Shown here one piece after another: positions 4,226 through 63,435 of a stretch of DNA of 64,000 bases. The notes beneath the pieces are model-generated. The model was not told where the DNA came from. It saw only the letters and a program-made list of their open reading frames with translations, and ran no database searches. How positions within the stretch are numbered: the stretch's first letter is position 1; every line of letters begins with the position of its first letter. The translations under genes and the position numbers were made by a program. Where the stretch lies: positions 1-64,000 of IMG/VR virus record IMGVR_UViG_3300007352_000001, one strand, 5' to 3'.

Positions 4226-4246
4226 TTCTCCACAAGGTTGTCCACA
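4226..4246 (+). promoter_or_regulatory. two tandem DnaA-box-like 9-mers (TTCTCCACA, TTGTCCACA)
   Basis: Match to the high-GC DnaA box TT(G/C)TCCACA; 3-nt spacer; intergenic. Confidence 0.45.
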
Positions 4247-4295
4247 GGTTGATGCCGCCCACGTCCTGCGCGATAACCAGGGGCTGGAGGTGGTG

Positions 4296-6834: not shown

Positions 6835-7004
6835 TGACGCACCCCACCACCGTCTGCGACCAGGCGTCGCACGTGAACTGCGGTTGCCTGCTCTCTACTC
6901 CAACACGGGGTGAAGAGCCGAGCTTCATGGCCGAGATCCGAGCGGTAGACGCGTACTTCGATCGGCCGCGCTGGTGGCATCGCTTCTGGCCATGCCGTCG
7001 CTGA
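6834..7004 (+). CDS. small hypothetical protein
   Basis: TGATG coupling with the upstream gene. Confidence 0.35.
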   Translation: MTHPTTVCDQASHVNCGCLLSTPTRGEEPSFMAEIRAVDAYFDRPRWWHRFWPCRR

Positions 7005-16286: not shown

Positions 16287-17161
16287 TGCAAGTCGCCATT
16301 GGGGTTCCCAGCTGCATCTACCCAGAGGGGCTGTTCCACTTGGGGCGTTCGATTGCGGCGGCAACCCAGCACGATCACTACCGTTTGACGGTACTCCTCG
16401 ACGGCAACCGCGACTGGCAGCGGCTCGATCGCATGCCGGAGTATCAGGCGCGGTTCACCACGCTGAAGCTCCACGACGATCCCGAGACCGACCACCAGCG
16501 GATCGAGCGCAACAACCCGAACGTCGGCGACTACGCGTTCCTGCAGGGCTGGCATGCGGCCGGCACTGAAGTGATCCGTCACGCGGAGCGTCGCGGCGTC
16601 ATCGCGGCTTGGAACACGCTGGCGATGCATCTCCTCCAGACCGATGCCGACTACATCGTGATCATGAACGACGACGTGGTCGTGCAGCCTGGCTGGCTGA
16701 ACTACCTGCTGGGCTGCGCCAACAAGGGCTACCCGAAGGGCATCATGTTCGGCTTCGGCAGCGCCGGCACGCCGTCGCATCCTGGTCCGGCATGGCCGGG
16801 GCTGAAGGAAGAGAACTTCTGGGGGCCGTGTCTGTTCCTGCGCGCGAGCTGTGTGCGCGAGCTGATCGGCGATCGCGGCTGGGTGTTCAACCCCGAGTTC
16901 ACCGTCTTCAACTCCGACGGCTGGTTCATCCAAGAAGCCCTCGGCCGCGGCTTCGACATCGTCTCGATCGCCGACCCGCTGAAGCTGAGCACTGTCTGGC
17001 ACCGCTCGCTCGGGCACTGGGTGTACGACGAGGTCATGCGCGACCGTGCCCGCGTCGACGAGTACCACCGCGTCGGCAACTACCCGGCGGCGAACGGCAA
17101 GCTCTTCACCTACGTGCGGATGAACGACGCGTACGACGTCATCGACGAGAAGCTCCTCTAG
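16286..17161 (+). CDS. GT-A fold (GT2-like) glycosyltransferase
   Basis: GVIAAWN...DYIVIMNDDVVVQPGWL. Confidence 0.75.
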   Translation: MQVAIGVPSCIYPEGLFHLGRSIAAATQHDHYRLTVLLDGNRDWQRLDRMPEYQARFTTLKLHDDPETDHQRIERNNPNVGDYAFLQGWHAAGTEVIRHAERRGVIAAWNTLAMHLLQTDADYIVIMNDDVVVQPGWLNYLLGCANKGYPKGIMFGFGSAGTPSHPGPAWPGLKEENFWGPCLFLRASCVRELIGDRGWVFNPEFTVFNSDGWFIQEALGRGFDIVSIADPLKLSTVWHRSLGHWVYDEVMRDRARVDEYHRVGNYPAANGKLFTYVRMNDAYDVIDEKLL

Positions 17162-24427: not shown

Positions 24428-24862
24428 ATGCCCGCCGCTGACGATCTCCAGGACTCACTCTCCACGACCAAGCGGTTGATGGAAGAGTTCGGGTTCACCA
24501 AAGAAGAGGTCCGGCAGCACTTCGAGAACGTGCAGGCGGACATGCAGCGCATGGGTGAGTCGAACGGGGAGCTTGCGGAGGCCGCTCGCTACCTCGTCGA
24601 CGAACTGCGGAAGGCGTACCCCAAGCGGGTCGGCGACTTCTCGCAGCACGGCCCCGCGTTGCCGGACGACCAGTTGCGGAAGGGGCGAGGGGATGGCGGG
24701 GCGGTACGACTGGTACAGCATTCCGAAGACGATCATTTACCACAACAACTGCCCGGACGGATTCACCGCCGCCTGGGTCGCTCACTCGAAGTTTGGCGAC
24801 CACGACGTCCAGTTCCACCCAGCCAACTTCGGCGAACCGCCGCCCGACGTCGCTGGCCATGA
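24428..24862 (+). CDS. hypothetical protein carrying the RVGDFSQHGPA tag
   Basis: Helical N-terminus; motif at about 24626; 3' part overlaps the DHH gene. Confidence 0.55.
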   Translation: MPAADDLQDSLSTTKRLMEEFGFTKEEVRQHFENVQADMQRMGESNGELAEAARYLVDELRKAYPKRVGDFSQHGPALPDDQLRKGRGDGGAVRLVQHSEDDHLPQQLPGRIHRRLGRSLEVWRPRRPVPPSQLRRTAARRRWP

Positions 24863-36333: not shown

Positions 36334-37860
36334 ATGATCACTGCCAATCTGGTGGAACAGACGAGTGGTCGTGGCCTGAGCGACAACTTCCTGTCGCTGG
36401 GTCGCGTCCTCTCCGAGGAGCGCTGGGCCGACTACTGCAACGACCCCGAGATCCCCATCGCAGAAGACGCGACCCGCTACGGTCTCGCGTGCATGCTGGA
36501 GAATCTCGATCGCTTCCTCGGTCAACTCGACGAGACCACGCGCGCGGTCGCGATCGGCGACTTCCAGAAGTACGCCTTCCCCCTCGTCCGCGCCATCTTC
36601 CCTGAACTCGTCGCGAACAGCCTGGTGTCGGTGCAGCCGATGCTCGGCCCCACGAGCCTGATCTTCTACCTGGACTTCGTCTACGGGACGAACAAGGGCT
36701 CGGTGCGTCGCGGTGACACCGCCTTCTCGGCGGTGGCGCGCGGCCCGAACAACCCATCGTACACCTCGCCGAACGTCGACGAGGAGCAGGTCGCGACTGG
36801 CGACGGCACCACGGTGGCGTTCACCGCGAACATCTCCTTCACCCCGATCGTTCCGTCCTCGATCGTCATCACCGACGGCATCCAGGTCGTGACCGACAAC
36901 GGGGCGGGCGGTGTGACCGGCGACGCGTCGGCCGGCTCGGTCAACTACGCCAACGGGTCGCTGGCCGTCACCTTCAGCTCGGCGCCGTCGTCGGGCACCC
37001 CGATCACCGTGTCGTACACGTACGACATGGAAGCCAACCCCCTCCTGCCGGAGATGGACCTGGTGCTGCAGAGCACCCCGGTCATGGCCCGGCCGCGCAA
37101 GCTCAAGACCAAGTGGTCGCTGGAGGCGGCGTTCAACCTCCGCTCGCTGCATGGTCTGGAGGCTGAGGTCGAGTTGACTTCGGCCGTCGGCAGCGAGATC
37201 CGCTTCGAGATCGACCGCGAGGTCATTCTCGATCTGCAGAAGCTCGCGGGCGCGGGCTCGGTGTTCTGGAACAAGGACCTGCCGCAGGGCGTGTCCTTCA
37301 CCGAGCAGAAGCTGTCGATCATCGACACCTTCGTCACCGCCTCGAACCTCATCCACAAGACGACTGGTCGCGGCACCGCCACCTGGATCCTCGGTGGCGA
37401 GGGCGTGGCCAACGTCATCGAGACTCTGCCCGGCTTCGTGCCGACGCCGGGTCTCCCGAGCGGTCTCGTCAAGGGCGTGTACCGCGCGGGCCGTCTGAAC
37501 GGGCGCTGGGACTTCTTCAAGGACCCGTTCTACACGGACAACTTCTTCATGATGGGCTACAAGGGCATGAGCTTCCTGGAAGCCGGCTACGTGTACGCCC
37601 CGTACATCCCGCTCTACACCACGCCGACGATCGTCCTGGACGACTTCATCGCGCGCAAGGGTCTCGCCACGCAGTACGGCAAGAAGGCGGTGAACCCGCT
37701 CTTCTACGTCACCGGTGAGGTCGACCGCGGTCTCGCTCTGGAGACCAAGGCTGGTGTCGCCGCGGGCACCATCTCGTCGAGCGGTCAGGCCGTCCTGACC
37801 CACGGTTCGGCGAAGGAAGACCTCGGCCTGGCAACGGGCCGCGGCGTCTTCGGCATCTGA
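36334..37860 (+). CDS. gp23: T4 gp23-type major capsid protein
   Basis: LVSVQPMLGPTSLIF, RKLKTKWSLEAA, EIRFEIDREVI, AGYVYAPYIPL, KGLATQYG. Confidence 0.96.
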   Translation: MITANLVEQTSGRGLSDNFLSLGRVLSEERWADYCNDPEIPIAEDATRYGLACMLENLDRFLGQLDETTRAVAIGDFQKYAFPLVRAIFPELVANSLVSVQPMLGPTSLIFYLDFVYGTNKGSVRRGDTAFSAVARGPNNPSYTSPNVDEEQVATGDGTTVAFTANISFTPIVPSSIVITDGIQVVTDNGAGGVTGDASAGSVNYANGSLAVTFSSAPSSGTPITVSYTYDMEANPLLPEMDLVLQSTPVMARPRKLKTKWSLEAAFNLRSLHGLEAEVELTSAVGSEIRFEIDREVILDLQKLAGAGSVFWNKDLPQGVSFTEQKLSIIDTFVTASNLIHKTTGRGTATWILGGEGVANVIETLPGFVPTPGLPSGLVKGVYRAGRLNGRWDFFKDPFYTDNFFMMGYKGMSFLEAGYVYAPYIPLYTTPTIVLDDFIARKGLATQYGKKAVNPLFYVTGEVDRGLALETKAGVAAGTISSSGQAVLTHGSAKEDLGLATGRGVFGI

Positions 37861-48470: not shown

Positions 48471-49079
48471 GTGTGGTTGCTGGGCCTCGCGGCCTGGTTC
48501 TTCCTGTGCGAGCCGGCGTGGGCACAAGAGCCTACGCCGGCTCCAACAGGTGCCGCCGCAGAATACGACCGCAGCGCGTGGCCGCTGTGGACTGATGAAG
48601 ATCGAGATCGGGAGGACGCGCGCACGGAGGTGCTGATTCGCGACTCACTGATCCCGCCGCGCGTGTTCGTGAACAACCGCGGCAACCGATTGGTCAGCGA
48701 GGGCGTGTGGGTCTGTCCCTACACTGGACAGGTCATGACCGACCCGCGCCAACTCGACATCGACCACATGGTACCGCTCGGCTACGCGTTCCACGCGGGC
48801 GGCAAGGACTGGACGCGTGAGCAGCGCCAGGCCTATGCGAACTGGCTCCAAGATCCGAATCACCTGAAAGCGGTGAGCGCCTCAGCCAATCGCTCGAAGA
48901 GCGATCAAGGTCCGGCCGAGTGGAAGCCGCCGCTGAAGACGACCTGGTGCGAGTACGCGATTGCGTTCGCGGAGGTCGCGACCACGTGGCACTTGACGTT
49001 GCCGCCGGCTGATGCGCATGCGATCGTCGAGATGATCGCGACCTGCCCGCTCTCCAACCGGTGGGATCTCCGCGAGTAA
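48471..49079 (+). CDS. secreted HNH-type nuclease (DUF1524-like)
   Basis: Signal peptide; CPYTG, DIDHMVPL, AVSASANRSKSDQGP.EW.PP..WCEYA. Confidence 0.85.
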   Translation: MWLLGLAAWFFLCEPAWAQEPTPAPTGAAAEYDRSAWPLWTDEDRDREDARTEVLIRDSLIPPRVFVNNRGNRLVSEGVWVCPYTGQVMTDPRQLDIDHMVPLGYAFHAGGKDWTREQRQAYANWLQDPNHLKAVSASANRSKSDQGPAEWKPPLKTTWCEYAIAFAEVATTWHLTLPPADAHAIVEMIATCPLSNRWDLRE

Positions 49080-49163
49080 CACGATCGACGAAGTGCCGGC
49101 TCTAGCTACGCCGCCGGCAAGCAGGTAGAGCAGAGCAGAGACGTCGCTCGGCCAGATGGAGAC

Positions 49164-49241
49164 CGGGGTGTAGGGCAGCCAGGCCAGCCCACCTGCCTTG
49201 GGAGCAGGTTGCCGCAGGTTCAAATCCTGCCACCCCGACCA
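49164..49241 (+). tRNA. tRNA-Pro(TGG), CCA encoded
   Basis: Acceptor CGGGGTG/CACCCCG; anticodon arm CCTGC-CTTGGGA-GCAGG; GGTTCAAATCC T-arm. Confidence 0.93.
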
Positions 49242-49242
49242 T

Positions 49243-50037
49243 CTAGGCGACGACCCGATCGACGCGCTTCACGGGCGCATCAACGGCGTAGAGCGGTGAC
49301 AAGTGCCGCGGCTTCATGGTCGCGATGAAGTGCTCGCGCCAGCCGCGGGCAAACGCATCGAGATCCTCGATCGACTGCACCACGAGCTGTCCGTGCGCCG
49401 CGTGCCGGATGCTGGTGCGCACCACCTGCTGCGCCAGCTCGTGCGCTTCGCTCCAGGTCGCCGTGCGGCCGAGGTAGGTGTCGATGCGCTCCCAGAGCTG
49501 CTCGCGCTTCTCGGGGGGAATCACCCGAGCGTGTCGATCCAAGGCTGAGGCCGACCGGATGGCCTTGCCGCGGGTGCGGTCCTCCTCGGAGACGTCCTCG
49601 ACCGGCGCGCCAGGCTTCGGGATGTTCAGTGCCGCGGCGATCTCACAGCGGCGCTGATGGGCGAGCTGCTCGTAGCGCTCGTGGCAGTCGACACAGAGCG
49701 CGACGACGTCGTACGAGTTTCGAGAGCCCAGGCGGTTGGGAAACCACCGCCGGTAGCAGTACGGCACGATGTGGTGCTTGGTGAGCCGCTCAGTGACTCC
49801 ACAGACGGCGCAGTGGTTCGCCCGCGGCAAGAGCATGTAGGCGTTGCCCTTGTCGCCCGGACCGTTCGGCTCGAAGGTGAGCCGGATCTGCTTGTCGCCG
49901 ACGTACTCGGCGAGGTTGTTGCGCAGGTAGAAGTTCACCTTGCGCTGTGATGCTCGACACAATGGCTCCCCCTCACGGGTGAGGATCAACCAGTTGTCGA
50001 ACAGGACCCCCCGCCTCGCCTTCAACCGCCACCGCAT
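49243..50037 (-). CDS. HNH-like protein resembling the EXD2 C-terminal domain
   Basis: G.PLC....K..FY, RLTFEP, CAVCG, HHIVPYCYRRWFP, NSYDVVALCVDCH, HG..VV, WREHF..MKPRHL. Confidence 0.75.
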   Translation of the reverse strand: MRWRLKARRGVLFDNWLILTREGEPLCRASQRKVNFYLRNNLAEYVGDKQIRLTFEPNGPGDKGNAYMLLPRANHCAVCGVTERLTKHHIVPYCYRRWFPNRLGSRNSYDVVALCVDCHERYEQLAHQRRCEIAAALNIPKPGAPVEDVSEEDRTRGKAIRSASALDRHARVIPPEKREQLWERIDTYLGRTATWSEAHELAQQVVRTSIRHAAHGQLVVQSIEDLDAFARGWREHFIATMKPRHLSPLYAVDAPVKRVDRVVA

Positions 50038-50057: not shown

Positions 50058-50321
50058 ATGGCCGACCGCGTCCAGGTCCAGTCAGAAACGACCACCTCCG
50101 TCGGTGTTGGGCCTGGTCTGGTGCGCCCGTTGGCGCTGCAGCACAGCGGCCTCGCTGACGAGTTCTTCCACCGCTTCGGCCGCATGCACCCCGGCGGCAT
50201 CCAACAGGCCTTCTCCGACTTTGCCCACGCGCGCGACCTCTCCAGGGACGACGCCGAACAGTTGCGCACCCGGCTGCATCAGGTGTACGGTCTCACCGGC
50301 ATTGCGACGCGTGTCTGGTGA
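50058..50321 (+). CDS. hypothetical protein
   Basis: AGGAG upstream; first gene before the tag array. Confidence 0.55.
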   Translation: MADRVQVQSETTTSVGVGPGLVRPLALQHSGLADEFFHRFGRMHPGGIQQAFSDFAHARDLSRDDAEQLRTRLHQVYGLTGIATRVW

Positions 50322-50330
50322 GGTGAGGGC

Positions 50331-50555
50331 ATGGGTGAGGGTGGGGACTTTTCCTTTGTCGATCTAGGAGAGCAGTGCACCAGCGACCGCGCGCTGGCGA
50401 TCCGGTTCCTCTGGGAGAGCATGCAGGCCGGCCTCATGCAGCTAGACGAAGTGCGCGCCGGCCTCGACCTCCCACTGATCGGGCAGCCGCCTGGCCGTGT
50501 TGGTGACTTCTCGAAGAGCGGTCCAGCGCCGCTCAGCTTGCCAGGATACTGCTGA
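50331..50555 (+). CDS. tag-array protein 1 (tail GRVGDFSKSGPAPLSLPGYC)
   Basis: Shared C-terminal motif; TGATG coupling. Confidence 0.7.
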   Translation: MGEGGDFSFVDLGEQCTSDRALAIRFLWESMQAGLMQLDEVRAGLDLPLIGQPPGRVGDFSKSGPAPLSLPGYC

Positions 50556-50905
50556 TGCTCACGCGCAAGCGTCTGCTCGCCGCGGTGAAGTACCCGACCC
50601 GGTACGATGACCGCTGGCGTGAAGAGAGCTGGCCGGTCATCCGGTTCACGACCGACCAGATGTCCGAGCTGAAGCTAGGGGATCGCATCAGTGTCGACGT
50701 CGGCAAGGCGAGACAGAGCCGCATCTACGTCGTCGACTCGATCACGCACACCCCCGAGGGCGGGACCAACATCAGTGCCCACATGCCGATTCTCGGCGAC
50801 GCACCAGGTGAGAAGACCTACGACGTCTTGCTCGGGCCACCGAAAGGGCGTGTCGGGTTCTTCTCGAACGACGGCCCCGCGCCGAAGACTGCGAGCTGTC
50901 CGTGA
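50555..50905 (+). CDS. tag-array protein 2 (tail GRVGFFSNDGPAPKTASCP)
   Basis: Shared C-terminal motif. Confidence 0.75.
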   Translation: MLTRKRLLAAVKYPTRYDDRWREESWPVIRFTTDQMSELKLGDRISVDVGKARQSRIYVVDSITHTPEGGTNISAHMPILGDAPGEKTYDVLLGPPKGRVGFFSNDGPAPKTASCP

Positions 50906-51139
50906 ATGGGCGATCGCCTTCCAGATTTCTTCCACAACGGCACGTTCGACTTCGAGCCGCTGACGCGGCATCTCGACGAACTCGGTTGGCAGACCGAGGC
51001 CGCAATGCGTCAGTTCGCGCGATTGGCGGCGCTCGCTTTCCGTATTCCCGAGGAGTACCTCGTGCCGCCGATCCCGACTGGGAGAGTGGGGTCGTACTCG
51101 GAGGGTGGACCAGCGGCGCGCACAGCACTGCGGCCATGA
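50906..51139 (+). CDS. tag-array protein 3 (tail GRVGSYSEGGPAARTALRP)
   Basis: Shared motif; ATG directly after the previous stop. Confidence 0.75.
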   Translation: MGDRLPDFFHNGTFDFEPLTRHLDELGWQTEAAMRQFARLAALAFRIPEEYLVPPIPTGRVGSYSEGGPAARTALRP

Positions 51140-51366
51140 TCCCGAAGGGCGAGAAGCCGTTGACGCGCAACCAGCAACGCATCGTCAACGCGCTGAAGGT
51201 CATCGGTGAGAAGGGCCTCCTCGATCATCCAGTAGAAGATTTGACCGAGAGCGAAGACGTGCGCAGAGCTGTGGCAGTGCTCAAGAAGTTCTTGGTGCCG
51301 AAGAACGGCCGCGTCGGGTACTACTCGCAGCACGGACCGGCGAAGTCGACGAGTCGCTTCCCATGA
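51136..51366 (+). CDS. tag-array protein 4 (tail GRVGYYSQHGPAKSTSRFP)
   Basis: Shared motif; ATGA coupling. Confidence 0.75.
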   Translation: MIPKGEKPLTRNQQRIVNALKVIGEKGLLDHPVEDLTESEDVRRAVAVLKKFLVPKNGRVGYYSQHGPAKSTSRFP

Positions 51367-51635
51367 GCGGCAGCGGACCGGTGATGACGTGCGTCCAGTG
51401 CGGGAAGATCGGTCTGTTCCTACGCTCGGACAACCTCTGCGATCACTGCTGGAAGCAGCTCATGCACGCTCGTAACTACGGGATGACCGGCAGGCAGTTC
51501 CGAGACATCATCGAGGCGAGCCACATCGCGATGCCGGCGCCGATCCCTGACTGGATCACGGTGCTATTCCCAGCGGGGCGCGTCGGCTTCTTCTCGCAGT
51601 TCGGGCCGGCGCTGCGTACCGACACGCACCCATGA
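51363..51635 (+). CDS. tag-array protein 5, zinc ribbon (tail GRVGFFSQFGPALRTDTHP)
   Basis: CVQC...CDHC; shared motif; ATGA coupling. Confidence 0.75.
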   Translation: MSGSGPVMTCVQCGKIGLFLRSDNLCDHCWKQLMHARNYGMTGRQFRDIIEASHIAMPAPIPDWITVLFPAGRVGFFSQFGPALRTDTHP

Positions 51636-51904
51636 AAGACGCCCCGCCACCGAAAGGGGTCGTCTGGGTCGACCGGGAGGGCGTCCGCGTCCAGAACATC
51701 GAGGACTTCGAGTGGTACCGTGAGCACATCGAGAAGCCGCTGAAGGCTCTCATGGAACGCTCCGGCCAAGAGGTCATCCCCCTACGTGGATGGACGTTCA
51801 CGCCGGACGGCAAGTGGGCGATCAGCAAGAAGCTCCCTGTGCACGGAAGCGCCGGTTCCTATTCGATCAACGGTCCGGCAGACTCGACGAAGACATGTCC
51901 TTGA
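51632..51904 (+). CDS. tag-array protein 6 (tail GSAGSYSINGPADSTKTCP)
   Basis: Shared motif variant; ATGA coupling. Confidence 0.72.
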   Translation: MKDAPPPKGVVWVDREGVRVQNIEDFEWYREHIEKPLKALMERSGQEVIPLRGWTFTPDGKWAISKKLPVHGSAGSYSINGPADSTKTCP

Positions 51905-52194
51905 TCGACGAGTTCCCAGCCTTGCGCGGCTGGTACAAGATCACGCCACAGGCGGTCGAGTTGCGTGGCCGGGGAATCTCGCCGCTTGCGCCGATACATG
52001 TGTGTACCGGTCCGCCGGTGATCGAGTGCCAGTTTGACGACGATCGCTTGAAGCTCGAAGAATACCTGCGCCGGCAGATGAACGAGGAAGCCTGGCGGCT
52101 CGACATGCAGCTGCGACACTTCCGTGGGCGGCTAGGAAGCGTCGGCTCGTTTTCGCTCCAAGGACCTGCGCCGCGAACGGAGAACTACCCGTGA
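51895..52194 (+). CDS. tag-array protein 7 (tail GSVGSFSLQGPAPRTENYP)
   Basis: Shared motif variant; 10-nt overlap. Confidence 0.72.
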   Translation: MSLIDEFPALRGWYKITPQAVELRGRGISPLAPIHVCTGPPVIECQFDDDRLKLEEYLRRQMNEEAWRLDMQLRHFRGRLGSVGSFSLQGPAPRTENYP

Positions 52195-52379
52195 TGGACT
52201 CTGGGACGACCTATAAGCGTGGCCCTGCCCGCACCGGTGGTGAACAAGACGTGATCTCGCGCCGCTGGCGCAAGATGCTCTGCTACTGCGTCCGCACGGG
52301 CGTCACGGCGAAGATCAAGCGCGGCATCCGCCGCCGCGAACGCCGCGAGGGGCGGCACGAGGCACAGAGCGAATGGTAA
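52194..52379 (+). CDS. small basic hypothetical protein
   Basis: TGATG coupling; Arg-rich. Confidence 0.55.
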   Translation: MDSGTTYKRGPARTGGEQDVISRRWRKMLCYCVRTGVTAKIKRGIRRRERREGRHEAQSEW

Positions 52380-52966
52380 ACGAACGCTTCTTCGATCGCT
52401 CCGGGCCAGATGGGCTCGAAGGTGGGCAGGGCGGGGTCGCTGGCGGCTCTCCTAACTCCGAGTTCTCCGGTGGTGGCGCGAACAGCCAAGCCGGTCGTTG
52501 TCCGAGCTGCAACGCCAACTTCCCAGTCGACGATCCGAACCGGACGACGTTCTGCCCTGAGTGCGGGCAGCAGCGGCAGGGCGTGGTGGCGACGGCGGCA
52601 GCCCAGCAGCGCGGCGGGTGGGGCGTCTACGGCACTGGCCGGCCGGGCTATCTGCGTGTACCGGGCGGGCCGATCTCGACCAATGAAATGGCCGGCAAGC
52701 TCCGGCTCAAGTATCTCGGCGGCAATCTCTTCGAGATGGAGATGCAGGGCGCGACGCTCGAACACGCGCTCTCATCGTCGCACTCGGTGATGTCGCATCG
52801 CCTGCGGGCTCTTGGTATGAACCAGGATCGCGTGATGCAGACGCTGATCCACTGGCTCTTCAACGAGGCCAAGGCGGGACAGGAGTACGTGTGGGATCTC
52901 GCAGGCGGCACGCGTATGGTGGTCGACGAACGCGGTTTTCGTCGCCACGTCGAAGTTTCGGAATAA
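52373..52966 (+). CDS. zinc-ribbon hypothetical protein
   Basis: CPSC...CPECG. Confidence 0.65.
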   Translation: MVNERFFDRSGPDGLEGGQGGVAGGSPNSEFSGGGANSQAGRCPSCNANFPVDDPNRTTFCPECGQQRQGVVATAAAQQRGGWGVYGTGRPGYLRVPGGPISTNEMAGKLRLKYLGGNLFEMEMQGATLEHALSSSHSVMSHRLRALGMNQDRVMQTLIHWLFNEAKAGQEYVWDLAGGTRMVVDERGFRRHVEVSE

Positions 52967-53715: not shown

Positions 53716-55266
53716 ATGCCCATGGACGCTTCGCCCTACCAAGCTCAAGGACCGGGTGACCCGAGCGCAGGCGCGGGGCCTCCGGCGTCGCAGAATCCGC
53801 CGCCGCCAGGCCCACCACAGGTCCCTGGGGCGCCGGATCCGCGCATGCAGCCGTTTGGGCAGCAGGCGTCGCCCGGCAACTTCCTGCAGCAGATCCGACA
53901 GTTCTCGGCGGACTGTGCCCAGGTCGAAGAGATCGTCACCGAGCTGCAGAAGCTCCTGCTGCAGATCAAGATGTCGATGCCGCCCGATCGCGTCGAGGCC
54001 ACGACCCAGGCGATGGGGCAGCTGCTCGCGGCGCAGTCTGGGCTCACCGGTGCTCGCATGGTGCTGGAGATGGCCACGATGCCGCAGCAGCAAGCCGGTG
54101 CCGGCGGTGGCGGTGTGCGAGAGGACAAGACGCCCGAGCCGACGACGTTCACCGCGCTTGTCGAACAGGCGGGCAAAGCAAAGTTCGGCCTGCCTCATGC
54201 GCCGCGGCGCTACACCTGCCAGGACTGCGGCCAAGAGCAGAAGATCTCGACCAACCACACCGACGACGTATCGGACTACTGCCGCGGCTGTTCGTGGAAG
54301 CCGTCGTTCGGCAAGACGGGCCACAACATCCCCGCGCTCGGTGGGCATACCTACCGCCGCTTCTCCTACGTCGGTGAACTGAAGGAATCCGCCGATGACA
54401 TCGAGCGCACGCTCGGGGTTGGTCGCTACGCTCGGCCGCAGACCGCCGCTGATCGCAAGCTCATCCGCGACTTCCTGGCGCCGAACACGACGGCAACGGC
54501 AGATGCATGGGCACGCCGGCCGGCCGGTCCGGTGACCACGCACGCCCGCTCGCCGTTCCAGCTGTCGATCCAGAAGACCGCCCTCGGGAAGAAAGGCGGC
54601 GTGCACGAAGCGCTCGCGACGACCTCGCACCACATGAGCGGGGGCGGTGGCACCGCGACGCAGACGCTCACCATCCCTGAGCGCGAGTACCAGATCCGCG
54701 AGTTCACTGACGGGCCGGTCACCCGTTACGAGCTGTCGCGCATCGGCAATGACCTACGGGCGCAGGTGCCGATCTACGTGTTCCATGACCAGAAGACCGG
54801 CGCGTGGAAGTCGACGCTTTTCCAGGAAGACGACGGAGGCGGCGATCGCCACGCCGAGCTGGTGAAGCGCTGGCTCTTCCAGGGCCGGCCGGCACGCATC
54901 ACCGACGCCATGGAACCGGTTGGCGGCTCGCCGCCAGCGTGGCCGTTCATGGACAACGACGGCTACGAGCGGCCAGGCTTCCACTCGACCCAGCGGCCGG
55001 TGGGAATCCCCGATCCAGGTCCGGGCCAGGGGCACTATGCCGAGTCGTCGTTCGGCGCGCTTGTTGACGAGACCAAGCGGTTCTCGAAGAGCGAGGTGGT
55101 GGCGTCGCTGCGCCAGCACGCACAGGACATCCGCGACGGCAAGATCAAGACGCGCTCGCCGAACGATGAGCCGCACACCATCATTGGCCCCGACGGCAAG
55201 CCGCACATCCCTCGTGGCCGTGTCGGGGCTGCCTCGCGCGTGCGCGTGAAGAAAGGCCGCGTATGA
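53716..55266 (+). CDS. multi-module protein (Pro/Gln-rich N-terminus, zinc ribbon, FxALV[DE] linkers, C-terminal GRVGAASR)
   Basis: GGAGG RBS; CQDC...CRGC; VRED, LKES, VHEA linkers. Confidence 0.7.
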   Translation: MPMDASPYQAQGPGDPSAGAGPPASQNPPPPGPPQVPGAPDPRMQPFGQQASPGNFLQQIRQFSADCAQVEEIVTELQKLLLQIKMSMPPDRVEATTQAMGQLLAAQSGLTGARMVLEMATMPQQQAGAGGGGVREDKTPEPTTFTALVEQAGKAKFGLPHAPRRYTCQDCGQEQKISTNHTDDVSDYCRGCSWKPSFGKTGHNIPALGGHTYRRFSYVGELKESADDIERTLGVGRYARPQTAADRKLIRDFLAPNTTATADAWARRPAGPVTTHARSPFQLSIQKTALGKKGGVHEALATTSHHMSGGGGTATQTLTIPEREYQIREFTDGPVTRYELSRIGNDLRAQVPIYVFHDQKTGAWKSTLFQEDDGGGDRHAELVKRWLFQGRPARITDAMEPVGGSPPAWPFMDNDGYERPGFHSTQRPVGIPDPGPGQGHYAESSFGALVDETKRFSKSEVVASLRQHAQDIRDGKIKTRSPNDEPHTIIGPDGKPHIPRGRVGAASRVRVKKGRV

Positions 55267-55768: not shown

Positions 55769-56662
55769 ATGGCGCTGCTGGACATCTTCCGTATCTACGA
55801 TCGGCACGTGGTCGACTTCGTTCGACACACCGTGAATCCGATCATCACGCAGTTGGACGTCGATGTCAGTGACGACGTCTCCTTCGCTTCGCCCGAGCGT
55901 CCCTACGCGGCTCGCGGCAACAATCCCCAATCTCGTGAACAAGCAGAACGCACCAAGCACGTCTCCGGCCTGATCGGAGACTTCCAATACGACGACCTGG
56001 TCGGCCAGACCGAGACGACGATCGACGAGCAGCGCGGCGTGCAGACCTTTGCCACGCCACGAGTGTCAGTCACGCGGCTCACCTGGCAGTTCTCCTCCGC
56101 ACGCAACAACACCGTGCCGGTCCGCCGGCTCCGGGTGTGGGATGCGGACGGCAAGCAGAACTTCTACCTGCAGACCGCCAAGGGCATCCGTCCGTGGGAT
56201 CTGCACTACCAGCTCGACTTCCAGACGCGCTTTCGCGAGGACATGAACCAGCTCCTGCGCTGGTACCTGTACCACCCGGACCAGACCTACTCGATCCAGG
56301 TGGACTTCCGGTACCCGTGGGGCTTCAAGTCCATCCCGCTGCAGTTCGATCAGATCGTCGACAACTCCGACATCGAGACCGGCGAGAAGGAACGCGCGAT
56401 CCGCTACACCATCCCCATGACCGTTGAGGGGTGGATGCTCGAAGCGTACGAGACCGAGCGGGACATTCCGTTCGACTCGGTCGCGCCGAACTTCTGGCTC
56501 ACGCAGAAGACCCGCATCGCCAAGACGGTCTGCATTCAGCACGCGCTGGCGTCGTTCGACGCCGCCGGCAACGTGCGCTCCTCCACCATCATCGAGCTGC
56601 CCGAGACGTGTTTCTCCGGAAGCACCATCGCGCTCCAAGGCAGTGGGAGCACGACGATCTAA
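55769..56662 (+). CDS. tail terminator/sheath stabilizer (T4 gp15-like)
   Basis: FASPER, PRVSVTR, PWDLHYQLDF, DMNQL, RYTIPMTVEGW. Confidence 0.7.
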   Translation: MALLDIFRIYDRHVVDFVRHTVNPIITQLDVDVSDDVSFASPERPYAARGNNPQSREQAERTKHVSGLIGDFQYDDLVGQTETTIDEQRGVQTFATPRVSVTRLTWQFSSARNNTVPVRRLRVWDADGKQNFYLQTAKGIRPWDLHYQLDFQTRFREDMNQLLRWYLYHPDQTYSIQVDFRYPWGFKSIPLQFDQIVDNSDIETGEKERAIRYTIPMTVEGWMLEAYETERDIPFDSVAPNFWLTQKTRIAKTVCIQHALASFDAAGNVRSSTIIELPETCFSGSTIALQGSGSTTI

Positions 56663-58306: not shown

Positions 58307-58379
58307 TGTCCCCGACGGGAATCGAACCCGTGTTGCCGACGTGAAAGGCCGGTGTCCTAGACCGCTAGACGACGGGGAC
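58307..58379 (-). tRNA. tRNA-Glu(TTC), no encoded CCA
   Basis: GTCCCCG/CGGGGAC acceptor; CCGGC-CTTTCAC-GTCGG anticodon arm; GGTTCGATTCC. Confidence 0.92.
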
Positions 58380-58384
58380 TGAAG

Positions 58385-58466
58385 TGCGAAGAGGGGGAGT
58401 CGAACCCCCACGGATTGCTCCACTAGGCCCTCGACCTAGCGCGTCTGCCAGTTCCGCCATCCTCGC
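58385..58466 (-). tRNA. tRNA-Leu(GAG), long variable arm, C at position 33
   Basis: GCGAGGA/TCTTCGC acceptor; CTAGG-TCGAGGG-CCTAG. Confidence 0.88.
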
Positions 58467-58507
58467 CAATGCTGTCAGAAAACTGTGCTGGTTTTTCTGA
58501 CAAGGAG

Positions 58508-58592
58508 TGCGCGGAGAGGGACTTGAACCCCCACGCCGTGTGGCCGGCAACAGGTTTTGAGCCTGCCGTGTCTGCGATTCCACCATCCGCGC
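58508..58592 (-). tRNA. tRNA-Leu(CAA), long variable arm
   Basis: GCGCGGA/TCCGCGC acceptor; GCAGG-CTCAAAA-CCTGT. Confidence 0.92.
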
Positions 58593-59313: not shown

Positions 59314-61068
59314 ATGGCCACCGCATTCGTCTCTCCCGGTGTGTTTGTCCGGGAGATCGACCAATCCCTGTACGTCCGGCAGCTGTCGGATACGTCTTTG
59401 GGAGTGGTCGGTACCGCCAGCTGGGGTCCGGTCAACGAACCGCAGCTGATCACCAGTGTCAACCAGCTGCTCAACACCTTCGGTCCACCACTCGGACTCG
59501 ACACGAGCAACGCCTACGGCACCGCCGTCCACCCGATGATCAACACGGTCATGCGCTACCTGCGCAAGGGTCGTCGCGCGTGGGTCGTACGTGTCGAGGG
59601 GTCGGGCAGCAACTCGGCCGTGGAAGCCAACGTCGATCTCTACGCGATCGCCGGATCGGGCTCGGGGCCGTCGATTGCAGTGAACGCCAAGCACGGCGGC
59701 ACCTACGGCAACCAGATCCGCCTGCGGATCTCGAACGGCACGATCACTGGCCGCAAGAAGCTGACCGTCTACCTCGGCTCGCCGAACGACGCCGCGGTCC
59801 TGCAACAGGTCGAGACGTTCGACAACCTGAAGAAGACCAACGAGGCGGCCACCGCGACGACGTCGACCGACGTCGACTCATGGCTGACCAAGATCAACGG
59901 CGTCTCGGCGTACATCGAGGTCGCGCAGGGTGGTGACATCACCAACCAGCCCGACAACGTGAACCAGTCCGAGCCGGCGTCGGCGGGTCTCCAAGACGCG
60001 TCCGATCTCACCAACTCGGCCGATCAGCTCGACACCAACGACACGTTCTACAGCTTCGCGAACGGCGCCGACGGTGTGGGGCAGGTCTCGGACTCCGACT
60101 TCATCGGCACGCCGACGGGCGGGCCGAACGGGCAACCGTCTGGTCTGCACTGCTTCGACAACGCGGAAGCGTTCGTCGTCAACGTGCTGGCCGTGCCGGG
60201 CGCCCAGAAGCACTTCAACTCGACCGAGCACATCCGGCCGGGGCACACGTCGGCCATCGTCAACGCCCTCCAGTCCGTCTGCCTGATCCGGCAGGACTCG
60301 ATGGCACTGGTCGACCCACCGATCGCGCTCACGCCGACGCAGGTCGCGCACTGGCACAACGGCGACTTCAACCTCGACGGCACCGACGAGTCGGCGGCGT
60401 TCAACTCGAACCTCCTGGCGCTCCACTACCCGTGGGTCCAGGTGTTCGACGAGTTCACCGGCACCAACGTCTACCTCCCGCCATCGGCGTTCGTCGCCGA
60501 GGCGATCGCCAACACGGACTTCGTCTCGGATCCGTGGTTCGCACCGGCTGGTCTCAACCGTGCCCGGATCGAGGCGGCGATCAAGGCCGAGCGCACGCTC
60601 ACCCAGGGCGAGCGCGACTTCCTCTACTCGGGCGGCAACGTCATCAACCCGATCGCCACGTTCCAGGGCACCGGGCTGGTGATCTGGGGACAGCGCACGA
60701 TGCAGCGGCAAGCCACCGCGCTCGACCGCATCAACGTGCGCCGCATGCTGCTCATCCTCCGCAAGCTGATCGCCACGGCGTGTCAGTCGCTCGTCTTCGA
60801 GCCGAACGACGCGACGCTCTGGCGGCGTTTCCGTGGCCTCGTCTCGCCGTTCTTGGAGGCGGTGCAGAACCGCCGCGGCATCACGCAGTTCCGTGTGATC
60901 TGCGACGAGACCACCAACACCCCTGACGTCATCGAGCAGAACCAGATGATCGGGAAGATCTTCATTCAGCCGACCAAGACGGCTGAGATCCTGGTCATCG
61001 ACTTCGTGCTGACGCCACAGGGGGCGCAGTTCCAAGAGATCGTCCAGTCGCTCGGCGGCTCGGTCTGA
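59314..61068 (+). CDS. gp18: tail sheath protein (T4 gp18-like)
   Basis: FVSPGVFVREID, WGPVNEP, PWFAPAGLNR, WGQRT, RINVRR, FEPND, PTKTAE. Confidence 0.97.
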   Translation: MATAFVSPGVFVREIDQSLYVRQLSDTSLGVVGTASWGPVNEPQLITSVNQLLNTFGPPLGLDTSNAYGTAVHPMINTVMRYLRKGRRAWVVRVEGSGSNSAVEANVDLYAIAGSGSGPSIAVNAKHGGTYGNQIRLRISNGTITGRKKLTVYLGSPNDAAVLQQVETFDNLKKTNEAATATTSTDVDSWLTKINGVSAYIEVAQGGDITNQPDNVNQSEPASAGLQDASDLTNSADQLDTNDTFYSFANGADGVGQVSDSDFIGTPTGGPNGQPSGLHCFDNAEAFVVNVLAVPGAQKHFNSTEHIRPGHTSAIVNALQSVCLIRQDSMALVDPPIALTPTQVAHWHNGDFNLDGTDESAAFNSNLLALHYPWVQVFDEFTGTNVYLPPSAFVAEAIANTDFVSDPWFAPAGLNRARIEAAIKAERTLTQGERDFLYSGGNVINPIATFQGTGLVIWGQRTMQRQATALDRINVRRMLLILRKLIATACQSLVFEPNDATLWRRFRGLVSPFLEAVQNRRGITQFRVICDETTNTPDVIEQNQMIGKIFIQPTKTAEILVIDFVLTPQGAQFQEIVQSLGGSV

Positions 61069-61741: not shown

Positions 61742-63313
61742 TCACTCGGTCAAATACGCACGGAAGCGTATGCGATCGCCGTACACCACTTCGAGTTCGT
61801 GCCCGTCGGGCCAGCGCTCTTCTGCGCGCGGTGCCCACGGCAGATACCGACCGAGGAAGAAGAACGCCGCTGGCGGGGTGACATCGCCCCAGGCGCCATC
61901 CTCGGCCGCACGAAACTCGCGCGATCGGTCCCGTGCATCCAAATCCCCAGCAAGGAAGCGGAGCGTCTCGTAGTGCACGCTCCAGCGGTCGGAGAAGAAG
62001 TTGACCTGCGTGCCCGCCGGCAAGGTGACCACCTGCTCGGCGAAGAGCCGCAGTTCGGGTGCAAAGACGTGCTCGGCCTCTTCGGTCTTGAGCGACGCCG
62101 GGTAACGCAAGATGTCCACCGCGGCACTGAGAGCGAGAATCGCCCCGAGCGCGGCCGTCCACTGGTAGCGCTTGGAGTGCCACAAGGCGCCGAGCGGCAG
62201 CGCCGCCAGGAACGCGATGAACGGCGCGAGCGCCAGCGTGCGTCGGAAGTCGCCGTTGCCAGTGGTCAGGATCGCTCCCCACGGGAAGATCAAGACAGCT
62301 GCGCAGCAGACGGCGCACGCCCAGTCGAACCGGCGATGCCAAGCCAGCACGAAGCCGACAGCGGCGGCGATCGAGATCAGTGGGTTGATCGGTGGGAAGC
62401 CTGGACTGGACAGGCCGTCACCGAAGTCTGGGCGCCCGCCAGCGAGAAGCCCAACAACGAACTTCCCTAGCTCGGCGATGATGAGCGCCACGCGCTCCCA
62501 CCAGTGCGCCGCGGCCAGCCACTCCTCGGACGTGAAGATCATCAGGCCGGAAGCGCGGTTGAAGTACTGCTGTGGGTTCTCGACCGCATACAAGATCATC
62601 GGCACCACCGCGGTGCTCACCGCCACCGCGAAAATGGTCGCCCGCGCCAGGTAGCGATCAGACGGCTCACGGATTTTCGCCAGCACGAACATAGCCGCGT
62701 AGAGCGCAAAGGTGAGTGGATAGGCGTTGTACGTGTAGATCCCCAAGCCTGCGAGGAACCCCGCGGCCAGGGACAGCCCTGGGTGCGCACGGGTACGCAG
62801 CGCGTAGGTGAGCACGATGCAGGTCGCCAGCATCACCAGCGGCCAACTCGCCACCATGTAGCCGGTGCGGCTCAGGTGGAAGTGCCACGGCATGCACGCC
62901 AGCAGGAAGGCGGCGATGGTCGCCTGTGGGCGTGAGAACCAGAGCAACCCGAGCACGTAGGTGAGCACCACCGTGGCGATACCGAGGACCGCGATCGCCC
63001 CACGCAGCGTCGTCATCGAGACACCGAAGACAGAGAAGACGGCGGCGACCCAGTAGAGCGGCCCGGCCGGTTGCCCCAGTCCGCTGGGGTAGACGTAGGG
63101 ACCGATCCAGCCTTCGTCGAGGATGCGCTGGGCATCGAGCCCGGTGAGCGCCTCATCGCCGTGGAGACCGAACGGCACGTCGCCGATCCCCACCAAGCGG
63201 ACCAGTGCGGCGAAGACCGCCACCACCAGCCCCAGGCTGATGGTCAGCGCCCGCTCCCGCGTCGCCGTCGCCACCCCTGCCTGCGCCGGGGCGGCGGCAA
63301 CCCGAAACATCAT
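61742..63313 (-). CDS. GT-C fold membrane glycosyltransferase (GT39/ArnT-like)
   Basis: LVRL..G.VP.GLHGDEA, many TM segments, PWHFHLSR, GIYTY. Confidence 0.85.
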   Translation of the reverse strand: MMFRVAAAPAQAGVATATRERALTISLGLVVAVFAALVRLVGIGDVPFGLHGDEALTGLDAQRILDEGWIGPYVYPSGLGQPAGPLYWVAAVFSVFGVSMTTLRGAIAVLGIATVVLTYVLGLLWFSRPQATIAAFLLACMPWHFHLSRTGYMVASWPLVMLATCIVLTYALRTRAHPGLSLAAGFLAGLGIYTYNAYPLTFALYAAMFVLAKIREPSDRYLARATIFAVAVSTAVVPMILYAVENPQQYFNRASGLMIFTSEEWLAAAHWWERVALIIAELGKFVVGLLAGGRPDFGDGLSSPGFPPINPLISIAAAVGFVLAWHRRFDWACAVCCAAVLIFPWGAILTTGNGDFRRTLALAPFIAFLAALPLGALWHSKRYQWTAALGAILALSAAVDILRYPASLKTEEAEHVFAPELRLFAEQVVTLPAGTQVNFFSDRWSVHYETLRFLAGDLDARDRSREFRAAEDGAWGDVTPPAAFFFLGRYLPWAPRAEERWPDGHELEVVYGDRIRFRAYLTE

Positions 63314-63435
63314 GGTCGGCGCGTAGCATACCTCTTCAGCTTTTGTCCAGCACCACCTCACCACCCCACCACACTGACGGCACCGGTCGTCATTAACCGC
63401 GGCCTTTTTGTGAGCCGCGAAGCGAGGTCACCCGC

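What the first reader, a model, noticed from the sequence alone, without database searches (positions are those of the whole stretch)
50331..52194. Seven tandem unrelated mini-genes sharing one C-terminal peptide tail: candidate undescribed tagging/docking system
Seen: seven consecutive genes of 74-116 aa, all abutting or overlapping (TGATG, TGA-ATG, three ATGA, one 10-nt overlap). Their N-termini are unrelated (one is a zinc ribbon, one a beta-barrel). Their tails are GRVGDFSKSGPAPLSLPGYC*, GRVGFFSNDGPAPKTASCP*, GRVGSYSEGGPAARTALRP*, GRVGYYSQHGPAKSTSRFP*, GRVGFFSQFGPALRTDTHP*, GSAGSYSINGPADSTKTCP* and GSVGSFSLQGPAPRTENYP*. Six of seven have exactly 7 residues after GPA, with Thr at +3 and Pro as the last residue. 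The Gly, Arg, Val and Pro codons vary synonymously (GGC/GGG/GGA/GGT, CGT/AGA/CGC, CCA/CCC/CCG/CCT), so the conservation is at peptide level, not DNA level. Inference: a portable C-terminal signal that delivers different cargo to one partner. Options include a virion docking site, an AAA+/protease degron, a modifying enzyme acting on the invariant Ser, or an effector-display cassette. I do not recognise the motif from any known family.
Basis: partly seen in the sequence, partly recalled or inferred. Interest (0 to 1): 0.95.

Follow-up and report, generated by a model that had tools for sequence, protein, structure and literature searches.

The report
Seven phage mini-proteins, one shared tail
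Seven back-to-back small genes of an uncultured T4-like giant phage encode apparently unrelated proteins that all end in the same 19-20-residue peptide; selection keeps that peptide at the protein level and it matches no known family, so it is probably a docking tag whose partner is still unknown.

Summary
Seven abutting or overlapping genes (50331-52194, + strand; 74-116 aa) end in G-[RS]-[VA]-G-x-[FY]-S-x-x-G-P-A-x-x-T-x-x-x-P-stop.

Conservation is at the peptide level. Third codon positions of the invariant residues are close to random. There is no shared RNA structure. In a close relative (Logan SRR24775931) all seven genes recur in the same order. Tails and bodies there have equal dS (0.66 and 0.67), but tail dN is half the body dN (0.09 against 0.20, p = 2e-4).

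The bodies show no similarity to each other (BLAST, hhalign) or to any Pfam, PHROG or NCBIfam family. A tail profile searched against 1.84 billion proteins, the PDB, IMG/VR and metagenome contigs finds only these seven proteins.

The array plus one more small gene is a lineage-specific insertion. It sits between two conserved genes of the structural block of a 241-kb phage with a gp23-type capsid. More distant relatives have an empty or nearly empty slot there.

Best reading, which is inferred and not shown: an exposed C-terminal docking peptide brings different small accessory proteins to one partner. The likeliest partner is the assembling virion, by analogy with the T4 internal-protein targeting sequence. 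Other hubs, a degron, a modification site, a nascent-chain coupling element and strand co-assembly remain open.

The parts
50331..50555 (+). g1, 74 aa, acidic (pI 4.2). Variant tail at 50493-50552: 8 residues after GPA, ending L-P-G-Y-C. It has its own Shine-Dalgarno (SD) site.
   Evidence: The ortholog in L009 is only 48% identical overall, but the tail, including its last five residues, is kept.
50555..50905 (+). g2, 116 aa, basic. Predicted beta-rich body; tail at 50846-50902.
   Evidence: No homologue other than itself among 5.8 billion proteins.
50906..51139 (+). g3, 77 aa. Tail at 51080-51136. No SD site; its start follows the g2 stop directly (TGA-ATG).
51136..51366 (+). g4, 76 aa, basic (pI 10). 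Small helical body (helices 11-25 and 40-53) with a coil tail at 51307-51363. ATGA overlap with g3.
   Evidence: pLDDT 69; tail about 50
51363..51635 (+). g5, 90 aa. N-terminal CxxC...CxxC zinc-ribbon-like body; tail at 51576-51632. ATGA overlap.
51632..51904 (+). g6, 90 aa. Tail at 51845-51901, the G-S-A-G variant. ATGA overlap.
51895..52194 (+). g7, 99 aa. Tail at 52135-52191, the G-S-V-G variant. 10-nt overlap with g6.
   Evidence: The ortholog P0009 is 84% identical.
52194..52379 (+). dn62, a 61-aa very basic protein without the tail. It is part of the same lineage-specific insertion.
   Evidence: It is absent from L117, L118 and L119 and present in the close relative L008.
50058..50321 (+). 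up87, the conserved gene on the left edge of the insertion slot. It has no tail.
   Evidence: 91% identical in L009. A homologue in L119 lies directly next to the dn197 homologue.
52373..52966 (+). dn197, the conserved zinc-ribbon protein on the right edge of the slot. It has no tail.
   Evidence: 38-49% identical homologues in L117, L118 and L119.
24428..24692 (+). ORF8, a possible eighth carrier 26 kb away. It is a helical small protein with the core motif at 24623-24658. There is no stop 7 codons later; the frame runs on over the DHH phosphoesterase gene.

Best explanation
Shown: the seven ORFs are real protein-coding genes. Each is a different small body (helical, zinc-ribbon-like or beta-rich) joined through a Pro-rich stretch to the same 19-20-residue C-terminal peptide. 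Selection keeps that peptide as amino acids, not as DNA or RNA. The array is an accessory insertion in the structural gene block of a T4-like jumbo phage.

Inferred: the tail is an exposed, flexible short linear motif that docks all seven proteins onto one common partner. Its fixed register to the C-terminus (Ser at -13, GPA at -10 to -8, Thr at -5, Pro at -1) would reflect a binding groove that also reads the chain end.

Most likely partner (inferred from context and analogy only): the assembling virion, that is the prohead core or capsid interior. The seven would then be packaged accessory or ejected proteins. This would be a C-terminal counterpart of the N-terminal capsid targeting sequence shared by the otherwise diverse T4 internal proteins.

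g3-g7 have no Shine-Dalgarno (SD) sites and abutting or overlapping stop and start codons. This implies chained, coupled translation of the set from one message.
For: Real genes under selection: coding GC3 in all seven. Same seven genes in the same order in a second phage. Body dN/dS is about 0.30.

Peptide-level tail: third-position identity is 0.43 against about 0.34-0.40 expected. Tail dN is 0.091 against body dN 0.201, at equal dS of 0.661 and 0.669; Fisher p = 1.7e-4 for nonsynonymous and p = 1.0 for synonymous changes. In all 11 complete 19-residue tails, G1, G4, S7, G10, P11, A12, T15 and P19 are invariant.

No RNA element: junction z-scores run from -1.7 to +1.9. The RNAalifold consensus is -0.21 kcal/mol with no covariation.

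Unrelated bodies: all pairwise BLAST E-values are above 0.28. All hhalign probabilities are 7% or less. g4 is predicted helical with a low-confidence coil tail; g2 is predicted beta-rich at low confidence.

Context: the array lies in a co-directional block between the S77 prohead protease and gp23-type capsid protein (34.7-37.9 kb) and the gp15-like, sheath and tube genes (55.8-64 kb).

Accessory nature: the array genes are 48-84% identical between the two phages, against 91-100% for the flanking genes. Phages with 46-65% identical sheath proteins lack the array while keeping the flanking genes in synteny.

Precedents: T4 internal proteins are a diverse set that share only a capsid targeting sequence (PMC3012670). 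Encapsulin cargo proteins carry short C-terminal targeting peptides that bind an HK97-fold shell (PMC8346489).
Against: There is no direct evidence for any partner. No virion proteomics exist, and co-folding was not possible with these tools.

The T4 targeting sequence is N-terminal and is removed by the prohead protease. No conserved protease site precedes these tails.

The tails do not resemble the encapsulin targeting-peptide consensus beyond chance.

Relatives assemble virions without the array, so the tail has no essential structural role.

ORF8 carries the motif internally, not at a chain end. Half-motifs occur at an N-terminus and inside other proteins. Both fit a general hub-binding motif at least as well as a capsid tag.

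Only 64 kb of the 241-kb genome could be read.
Confidence: 0.35

Rival explanations
1. The tail is a docking peptide, but for a partner outside the virion. Candidates are a phage or host hub such as the sliding clamp, RNA polymerase or a chaperone. Alternatively it is a C-terminal degron read by an AAA+ unfoldase or protease, giving all seven proteins the same lifetime.
For: In T4, gp55, gp33 (112 aa) and the DNA polymerase share interchangeable C-terminal clamp-binding motifs on flexible linkers (PMC2988020). The window encodes an AAA ATPase at 900-2684 on the minus strand. The motif or half-motif also occurs internally and at an N-terminus in other proteins, as hub-binding motifs often do.
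Against: The tail profile finds no other protein among 1.84 billion, a set that did return all seven of this contig's tail proteins. So no called protein in that library, such as a polymerase or sigma factor, carries the full tail. T4 clamp motifs are hydrophobic and acidic; this tail is Gly- and Pro-rich with Arg. Known bacterial C-terminal degrons, as I recall them, end in nonpolar residues, not Pro. The array sits among structural genes, not replication or early genes.
Confidence: 0.25
2. The seven are old tandem duplicates of one gene. The tail is what remains of a common fold, or a strand that lets the seven proteins assemble with each other by beta-strand complementation or amyloid-like templating. 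It would not be a tag for a third party.
For: Tandem arrangement within one insertion slot. Synonymous sites between the paralog tails are saturated, so the duplications would be old. The alternating small and aromatic residues of the core could form a strand. The close chaining of the genes suits subunits of one assembly.
Against: No residual similarity between bodies. Lengths and predicted secondary-structure classes differ, and only g5 has the Cys pairs. Amyloid signalling motifs are about 25 aa, depleted in Pro, and paired with an NLR N-terminus in the neighbouring gene (10.1101/2020.01.06.895854). Here Pro is invariant at two positions and no such partner gene is adjacent.
Confidence: 0.12
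3. The tail acts while it is still inside the ribosome. This nascent-chain motif, ending in Pro-TGA, would slow termination so that the ribosome restarts on the abutting start codon. That would enforce coupled translation of genes that lack ribosome-binding sites.
For: g3-g7 have essentially no SD site (0 to -2.8 kcal/mol, against a window median of -5.9), and their stop and start codons abut or overlap. All seven stops are TGA, against 57% in the window. Pro is the last residue in six of seven, and the distance from the motif to the stop is fixed. From my own knowledge: C-terminal Pro slows termination, and TnaC needs fixed Trp-to-Pro spacing. ORF8 places the motif 12 codons before the next gene's start without ending there.
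Against: TGA is forced by the ATGA overlaps. Untagged genes in the window also overlap. g1 ends in Cys yet is followed by a coupled gene. g7's tail precedes a gene that has a good SD site. Seven full-size domain proteins each carrying an arrest peptide has no precedent. The bodies are themselves under purifying selection, so the products matter as proteins.
Confidence: 0.08
4. The tail is a recognition site for a modifying enzyme that acts on the invariant Ser or Thr (phosphorylation, glycosylation), or for a processing peptidase. It would be a shared modification sequon.
For: Ser7 and Thr15 are invariant in all 11 complete 19-residue tails. The window encodes a dual-specificity protein phosphatase (4065-4775), a GT2 glycosyltransferase (16286-17161) and a PMT_2-like GT-C enzyme (61742-63364, minus strand).
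Against: No kinase or transferase is adjacent to the array. PMT-type enzymes act on exported proteins, and the seven have no signal peptides. No NCBIfam or Pfam precursor or sorting-signal model matches. The Gly and Pro residues are as invariant as Ser and Thr, which fits a shape-specific binding site.
Confidence: 0.07
5. The repeat is a nucleic-acid element, such as a DNA repeat, promoter, terminator or RNA structure, that happens to lie in coding sequence.
For: The Ser codon is TCG in all seven tails. G-rich first and second codon positions give some DNA identity.
Against: Third positions are near random. dS in the tails equals dS in the bodies. There is no consensus RNA fold and no covariation. 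No terminator or promoter signal coincides with the tails.
Confidence: 0.01

Closest known systems
Capsid targeting sequence (CTS) of the T4 internal proteins IPI, IPII and IPIII
   Same: T4-type phage with a gp23 capsid and an S77 prohead protease. Small proteins of about 75-190 aa, diverse and fast-evolving, share only a short terminal peptide. They are accessory proteins (anti-restriction in T4) rather than essential parts (PMC3012670).
   Different: The CTS is N-terminal, about 10 residues, and is cut off by the prohead protease. This tail is C-terminal, 19-20 residues, with no conserved cleavage site before it. Packaging is not shown here.
Family 1 encapsulin targeting peptides (cargo-loading peptides)
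   Same: A short C-terminal peptide on unrelated cargo proteins, attached by a flexible linker, binds the inner face of an HK97-fold shell. It is rich in Gly, Ser and small hydrophobic residues (PMC8346489).
   Different: Similarity to the published consensus is not above chance for six of seven tails. No Linocin_M18 or other encapsulin shell family appeared in the Pfam scans of the window proteins I called. The shell here is a gp23-type capsid, which lacks the N-terminal helix that forms the encapsulin binding pocket.
[quoted passage not shown]
   Same: In T4-family phages, unrelated proteins, one of only 112 aa, carry an interchangeable C-terminal docking peptide on an unstructured linker (PMC2988020).
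   Different: Those motifs are hydrophobic and acidic and sit on replication and transcription proteins. Here the carriers are seven proteins with no known relatives inside the structural block, and no other protein in the searched library has the tail.
Bacterial and fungal amyloid signalling motifs (BASS)
   Same: A short motif at the C-terminus of small effector proteins, Gly-rich with patterned hydrophobic residues, and lineage-restricted.
   Different: BASS motifs are about 25 aa, depleted in Pro, and paired with the same motif at the N-terminus of an adjacent NLR/STAND gene. None of these features holds here.

Membership tests
T4 internal-protein CTS system | Short shared peptide at the N-terminus, ending in a prohead-protease site (L/I-x-E) | tested here: not met
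   The shared peptide is C-terminal. The N-termini of the seven differ. [LI]-x-E triplets occur in six of the seven bodies, at non-conserved places and at about the frequency chance predicts (my reading of the sequences).
T4 internal-protein CTS system | The proteins are found inside the mature head and are ejected with the DNA | not testable with these tools
   The phage is uncultured and no proteome exists.
T4 internal-protein CTS system | The phage has a gp23-type capsid, an S77 prohead protease and a scaffolding core | tested here: met
   PF07068 at E 5e-59 and PF03420 at E 9e-13; PHROGs 138 and 207.
Family 1 encapsulin targeting peptide | C-terminal location on cargo, after a flexible linker | tested here: met
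Family 1 encapsulin targeting peptide | Match to the targeting-peptide consensus quoted in PMC8346489 | tested here: not met
   Shuffle test p = 0.19-0.47 for six tails. g7 gives p = 0.017, which is not significant after correction for seven tests.
Family 1 encapsulin targeting peptide | Encapsulin (Linocin_M18) shell gene nearby | tested here: not met
   No such family in the Pfam scans of the window proteins I called. The rest of the genome was not seen.
Clamp-binding C-terminal motif (T4 type) | The same motif at the C-terminus of the phage DNA polymerase and late transcription factors | tested here: inconclusive
   The tail profile hits only the seven proteins among 1.84 billion, which argues against it. 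The polymerase, gp55, gp33 and gp45 genes of this phage lie outside the window and were not read.
Amyloid signalling motif (BASS) | Pro-depleted motif of about 25 aa, repeated at the N-terminus of an adjacent NLR/STAND gene | tested here: not met
   Two invariant Pro residues in the tail. No adjacent STAND gene. The AAA ATPase with weak nSTAND matches lies 48 kb away on the other strand and lacks the motif.
Known C-terminal sorting signals and RiPP (ribosomally synthesised, post-translationally modified peptide) precursor families | Match to a curated Pfam or NCBIfam model; a transmembrane helix or a maturase gene next door | tested here: not met
   No hits at E of 0.1 or below. The proteins are hydrophilic. 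No maturase among the neighbours.
Full-length paralog family | Detectable similarity outside the tail | tested here: not met
   BLAST E-values above 0.28. hhalign probabilities of 7% or less on alignments of each body with its ortholog, tails removed. Power is limited by the short lengths and two-sequence alignments.

The most novel reading that the evidence does not exclude
A previously unseen cargo-loading system in a tailed phage. A portable 19-residue C-terminal peptide, unrelated in sequence to the T4 targeting sequence or to encapsulin targeting peptides, would load a changeable set of small effector proteins into the virion for co-injection. This would be a natural, modular, encapsulin-style tag that works on a gp23-type capsid.
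Probability: 0.25. Interest if true: 0.8.

Novelty: new variant of a known kind. Interest (0 to 1): 0.62.

Why it matters
If the tail is a loading or docking tag, it is a compact, transferable address label found in nature on at least seven different bodies. It could help identify the effector set a jumbo phage delivers or co-regulates. It could also be used to place foreign proteins at the same site.

It would also show that T4-like phages have arrived more than once at the design 'diverse small proteins plus one shared terminal peptide', this time at the opposite end of the chain.

If instead the tail acts in the ribosome, it would be a new kind of peptide-encoded translational coupling device.

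Either way, a strictly conserved 12-residue core that is absent from 1.84 billion other proteins marks a specific molecular interaction that has not been described.

Tried and rejected
1. DNA or RNA repeat: rejected. Third positions are near random, dS is equal in tails and bodies, and there is no fold or covariation.

2. Known families: nothing in Pfam, PHROGs or NCBIfam for the seven proteins and their neighbours. The tail profile finds nothing in the PDB. A Foldseek search with the g4 model finds nothing.

3. More carriers elsewhere. The tail profile against 1.84 billion representative proteins finds the seven plus one spurious repeat protein. Two degenerate DNA patterns in IMG/VR find only the source contig plus chance hits that are out of frame or inside a transposase gene. 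The second pattern in metagenome contigs gives 106 loci, all chance, none with the first half of the motif.

4. Homologues of a body: g2 has none.

5. Structure prediction: the g2 model is too poor to use. The g4 model is moderate.

6. Encapsulin targeting-peptide resemblance: not above chance.

7. T4 late promoter TATAAATA, sigma-70 promoters, terminators and AT-rich islands gave no information on timing of expression.

8. Arrays with different bodies or a different tail at the same place in relatives: not found; the slot is empty or holds one gene.

9. Polyprotein by frameshifting at the junctions: considered from the frame order. There is no shared slippery sequence, so I did not pursue it.

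10. I did not walk along the remaining 177 kb of the contig.
Full report
**What the window is.** The window is the first 64 kb of IMG/VR contig IMGVR_UViG_3300007352_000001 (241,426 bp, 66% GC). Window and contig coordinates coincide. The window encodes:
- a gp23-type major capsid protein (36334-37860; PF07068, E 5e-59);
- an S77 prohead protease domain at the start of a 536-aa ORF (34684-36294);
- a gp15-like tail-sheath stabiliser (55769-56662);
- a tail sheath (59314-61068);
- a probable tube protein running off the window end, called by eye only.

The capsid protein is at most 38% identical to that of any sequenced phage. No phage in GenBank resembles the region at the DNA level apart from the tRNA. 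This is therefore a deep-branching, uncultured T4-like jumbo phage of unknown host.

**The observation.**
- There are seven + strand ORFs of 74, 116, 77, 76, 90, 90 and 99 aa from 50331 to 52194.
- The junctions are TGATG, TGA-ATG, ATGA three times, and one 10-nt overlap.
- Each ORF ends in G-[RS]-[VA]-G-x-[FY]-S-x-x-G-P-A, followed by seven residues with Thr third and Pro last. g1 instead has eight residues ending in Cys.
- A Pro-rich stretch usually precedes the motif.
- A degenerate DNA pattern for the first twelve tail codons occurs six times in the window and never in 100 shuffles.

**Are they genes, and at what level is the tail conserved?**
- All seven frames have the GC3-high coding signature of this genome.
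- Among the seven paralogous tails, the six invariant residues are identical at codon positions 1 and 2. At position 3 they are only 43% identical, close to the 34-40% expected from codon usage.
- Each mini-protein is a singleton cluster in a 15-billion-protein collection. Near-identical variants of g7 and of the upstream 87-aa protein led to two short contigs from one Logan assembly (SRR24775931; L008, L009).
- Those contigs carry the same seven genes in the same order, and every tail present is intact. The g2 copy is split between the two contigs.
- Nei-Gojobori counts over the orthologous pairs give body dN 0.201 and dS 0.669, and tail dN 0.091 and dS 0.661. The nonsynonymous deficit in the tails is significant (Fisher p = 1.7e-4). 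Synonymous change is the same in tails and bodies (p = 1.0).
- In all 11 complete 19-residue tails, G1, G4, S7, G10, P11, A12, T15 and P19 never vary.
- The junction regions are no more stable as RNA than shuffled sequence (z from -1.7 to +1.9). Eleven aligned tails give a consensus fold of -0.21 kcal/mol with no compensatory change.

The conservation is therefore on the peptide.

**Are the bodies related?**
- With the tails removed, all pairwise BLAST E-values exceed 0.28.
- hhalign on alignments of each body with its ortholog gives probabilities of 7% or less.
- g5 alone has two Cys pairs and a sub-threshold zinc-ribbon match.
- g4 is predicted as a small helical domain with a low-confidence coil tail (pLDDT 69).
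- g2 is predicted mostly as strands, but at pLDDT 42, with faint matches to the SH3-like DfrB fold.
- Isoelectric points range from 4.2 to 10, and none of the seven is hydrophobic.

Within the limited power available for such short proteins, they are not full-length paralogs. An origin by tandem duplication followed by extreme divergence cannot be excluded.

**How widespread is it?**
- No Pfam, PHROG or NCBIfam model matches any of the seven. These libraries include C-terminal sorting-signal and peptide-precursor families.
- A 31-position profile of the tails was searched without a word filter against 1.84 billion representative proteins. It returned the seven themselves (E 5e-11 to 7e-8) and one unrelated repeat protein. 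It found nothing in the PDB.
- Two independent degenerate DNA patterns, one for each half of the tail, found only the source contig in IMG/VR. The other hits were out of frame or inside a transposase gene.
- In metagenome contigs there were 106 single chance hits, none with the other half of the motif.
- g2 has no homologue at all in 5.8 billion proteins.

The tail is confined, as far as public data go, to this phage and one close relative.

**Genomic setting.** I fetched three phages whose sheath proteins are 65%, 60% and 46% identical (L117, L118, L119).
- They keep the 882-aa protein, dn197, dn516, the 122-aa protein, gp15 and the sheath in the same order (the 122-aa protein matched only in L117 and L118). 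A homologue of up87 was detected only in L119.
- They have no homologue of g1-g7, dn62, dn205 or the nucleases, and no protein with the motif.
- In L119 the up87 homologue directly abuts the dn197 homologue.
- The slot is also empty in L118 and holds one 93-aa gene in L117.

The seven genes plus dn62 are thus a lineage-specific insertion into a variable slot inside the structural block. Just upstream lie a tRNA-Pro, an HNH endonuclease on the opposite strand and a GH-E/HNH nuclease. Between the two array-bearing phages the array proteins are 48-84% identical. The flanking proteins are 91% and 100% identical. This fits accessory, fast-evolving genes.

**Translation.** up87 and g1 have good Shine-Dalgarno (SD) complementarity (-7.4 and -7.3 kcal/mol). 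g2 is weak (-4.1). g3-g7 have essentially none (0 to -2.8). dn62 has -6.6. The inner genes must therefore be translated by stop-start coupling as a chain. No promoter or terminator signal could be placed.

**Mechanism.** What is shown: a peptide module with a fixed register to the chain end, under stronger constraint than its carriers, sits on bodies that look unrelated, in an accessory cassette among virion genes.

The simplest reading is an exposed short linear motif that docks all seven proteins to one site. I rank the assembling virion first as the partner (about 0.35 for the whole statement), for three reasons:
- the array sits in the co-directional structural block;
- the carriers have the size, diversity and evolutionary tempo of T4 internal proteins, which 'share only a capsid targeting sequence' (PMC3012670);
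- C-terminal loading peptides for HK97-fold shells exist in encapsulins (PMC8346489).

These are analogies, not tests. The T4 signal is N-terminal and is cleaved off. The tails do not match the encapsulin consensus beyond chance.

**Rival readings.**
- *Another hub or a degron (0.25).* T4 itself provides the precedent of interchangeable C-terminal clamp-binding tails on gp43, gp55 and gp33 (PMC2988020). However, no other protein in the searched library carries this tail.
- *Strand co-assembly or a remnant of common ancestry (0.12).* The amyloid-signalling criteria are not met.
- *A nascent-chain element that slows termination at Pro-TGA to drive reinitiation on genes without SD sites (0.08).* The SD data, the fixed spacing and ORF8 make this attractive, but g1, g7 and the selection on the bodies argue against it.
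- *A modification sequon on the invariant Ser or Thr (0.07).* The window does encode a protein phosphatase and two glycosyltransferases.
- *A nucleic-acid element (0.01).* This is rejected.

**Extra copies.**
- ORF8 (24428-24692) is coding by GC3. It carries the core motif 26 kb away, but its frame runs on over the next gene.
- The 516-aa protein just downstream of the array ends with a half-motif that its homologues lack.
- Half-motifs occur three more times, against 0.4 expected.

These extra copies hint that the first half of the tail may be a more general binding motif in this phage.

**Verdict.** The feature is real, statistically solid and under selection, with no described counterpart in sequence. 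In kind it resembles known portable terminal targeting peptides, so I rate it a new variant of a known kind. Its partner and function remain inferred. It is restricted to one phage lineage, which limits its generality but not its interest as a mechanism.

Noticed in passing
window 24428-24860 (+): ORF8 is a small helical protein with coding-type GC3. It carries the core tail motif (24623-24658) but lacks the stop 7 codons later. Its frame overlaps the DHH phosphoesterase gene (ATG 24693) for 55 codons, and in that stretch only the DHH frame looks coding.
   Followed up: partly
window 55210-55266 (+): The 516-aa protein downstream of the array ends with a half-motif (P-R-G-R-V-G-A-A-S) 10 residues before its stop. 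Its 748-aa and 773-aa homologues in L117 and L118 end differently.
   Followed up: partly
window 6541, 7816, 19296 (+): The first half of the motif (G-R-[VA]-G, an aromatic residue, then Ser) recurs three times. One copy is inside a 234-aa protein, one is at residues 5-11 of the protein 7804-8613 (which has a strong Shine-Dalgarno site), and one is in a small ORF. That is 3 observed against 0.4 in codon shuffles.
   Followed up: partly
window 52194-52379 (+): dn62, the very basic 61-aa protein that closes the insertion, has Y-K-R-G-P-A-R-T near its N-terminus. This faintly resembles the second half of the tail. The relative has G-P-L at that place.
   Followed up: no
window 48471-50037: Directly upstream of the array lie a GH-E/HNH nuclease with a hydrophobic N-terminus (48471-49079), a tRNA-Pro(UGG) (49164-49241) and an HNH endonuclease on the opposite strand (49243-50037). 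These are marks of a plastic, mobile-element-prone spot.
   Followed up: partly
window 34684-36294 (+): The prohead protease ORF is 536 aa, but the S77 domain covers only residues 31-187. The long C-terminal extension may be a fused scaffold-like part.
   Followed up: no
window 4065-4775, 6974-7558, 16286-17161 (+), 61742-63364 (-): The phage encodes a dual-specificity protein phosphatase, a methyltransferase, a GT2 glycosyltransferase and a PMT_2-like GT-C membrane glycosyltransferase.
   Followed up: no
window, members of alignment A4 (not mapped to coordinates): Among 32 further window proteins, single members match PHROGs for a DarB-like antirestriction protein (E 1e-39), an endolysin, a minor head protein and a head-tail adaptor. 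One matches Pfam InPase (E 9e-51).
   Followed up: no
window 58307-58592 (-): A cluster of three tRNA genes, Glu(UUC), Leu(GAG) and Leu(CAA), lies on the minus strand between the gp15-like gene and the sheath gene.
   Followed up: no
L117 3515-4966; L118 2818-4503; L119 4771-5925: The slot between the up87-like and dn197-like genes varies among relatives. It is empty in L118 (where an up87-like C-terminal sequence, judged by eye, ends a 440-aa protein) and in L119. In L117 it holds one 93-aa Lys-rich protein plus 370 nt without a called gene.
   Followed up: partly
database protein P0008: This 199-aa metagenomic protein has four tandem 22-residue repeats that begin P-P-G-[SR]-V-G-F-F. It was the only hit to the tail profile besides the seven, and it looks like a translated DNA repeat, unrelated to the array.
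   Followed up: partly
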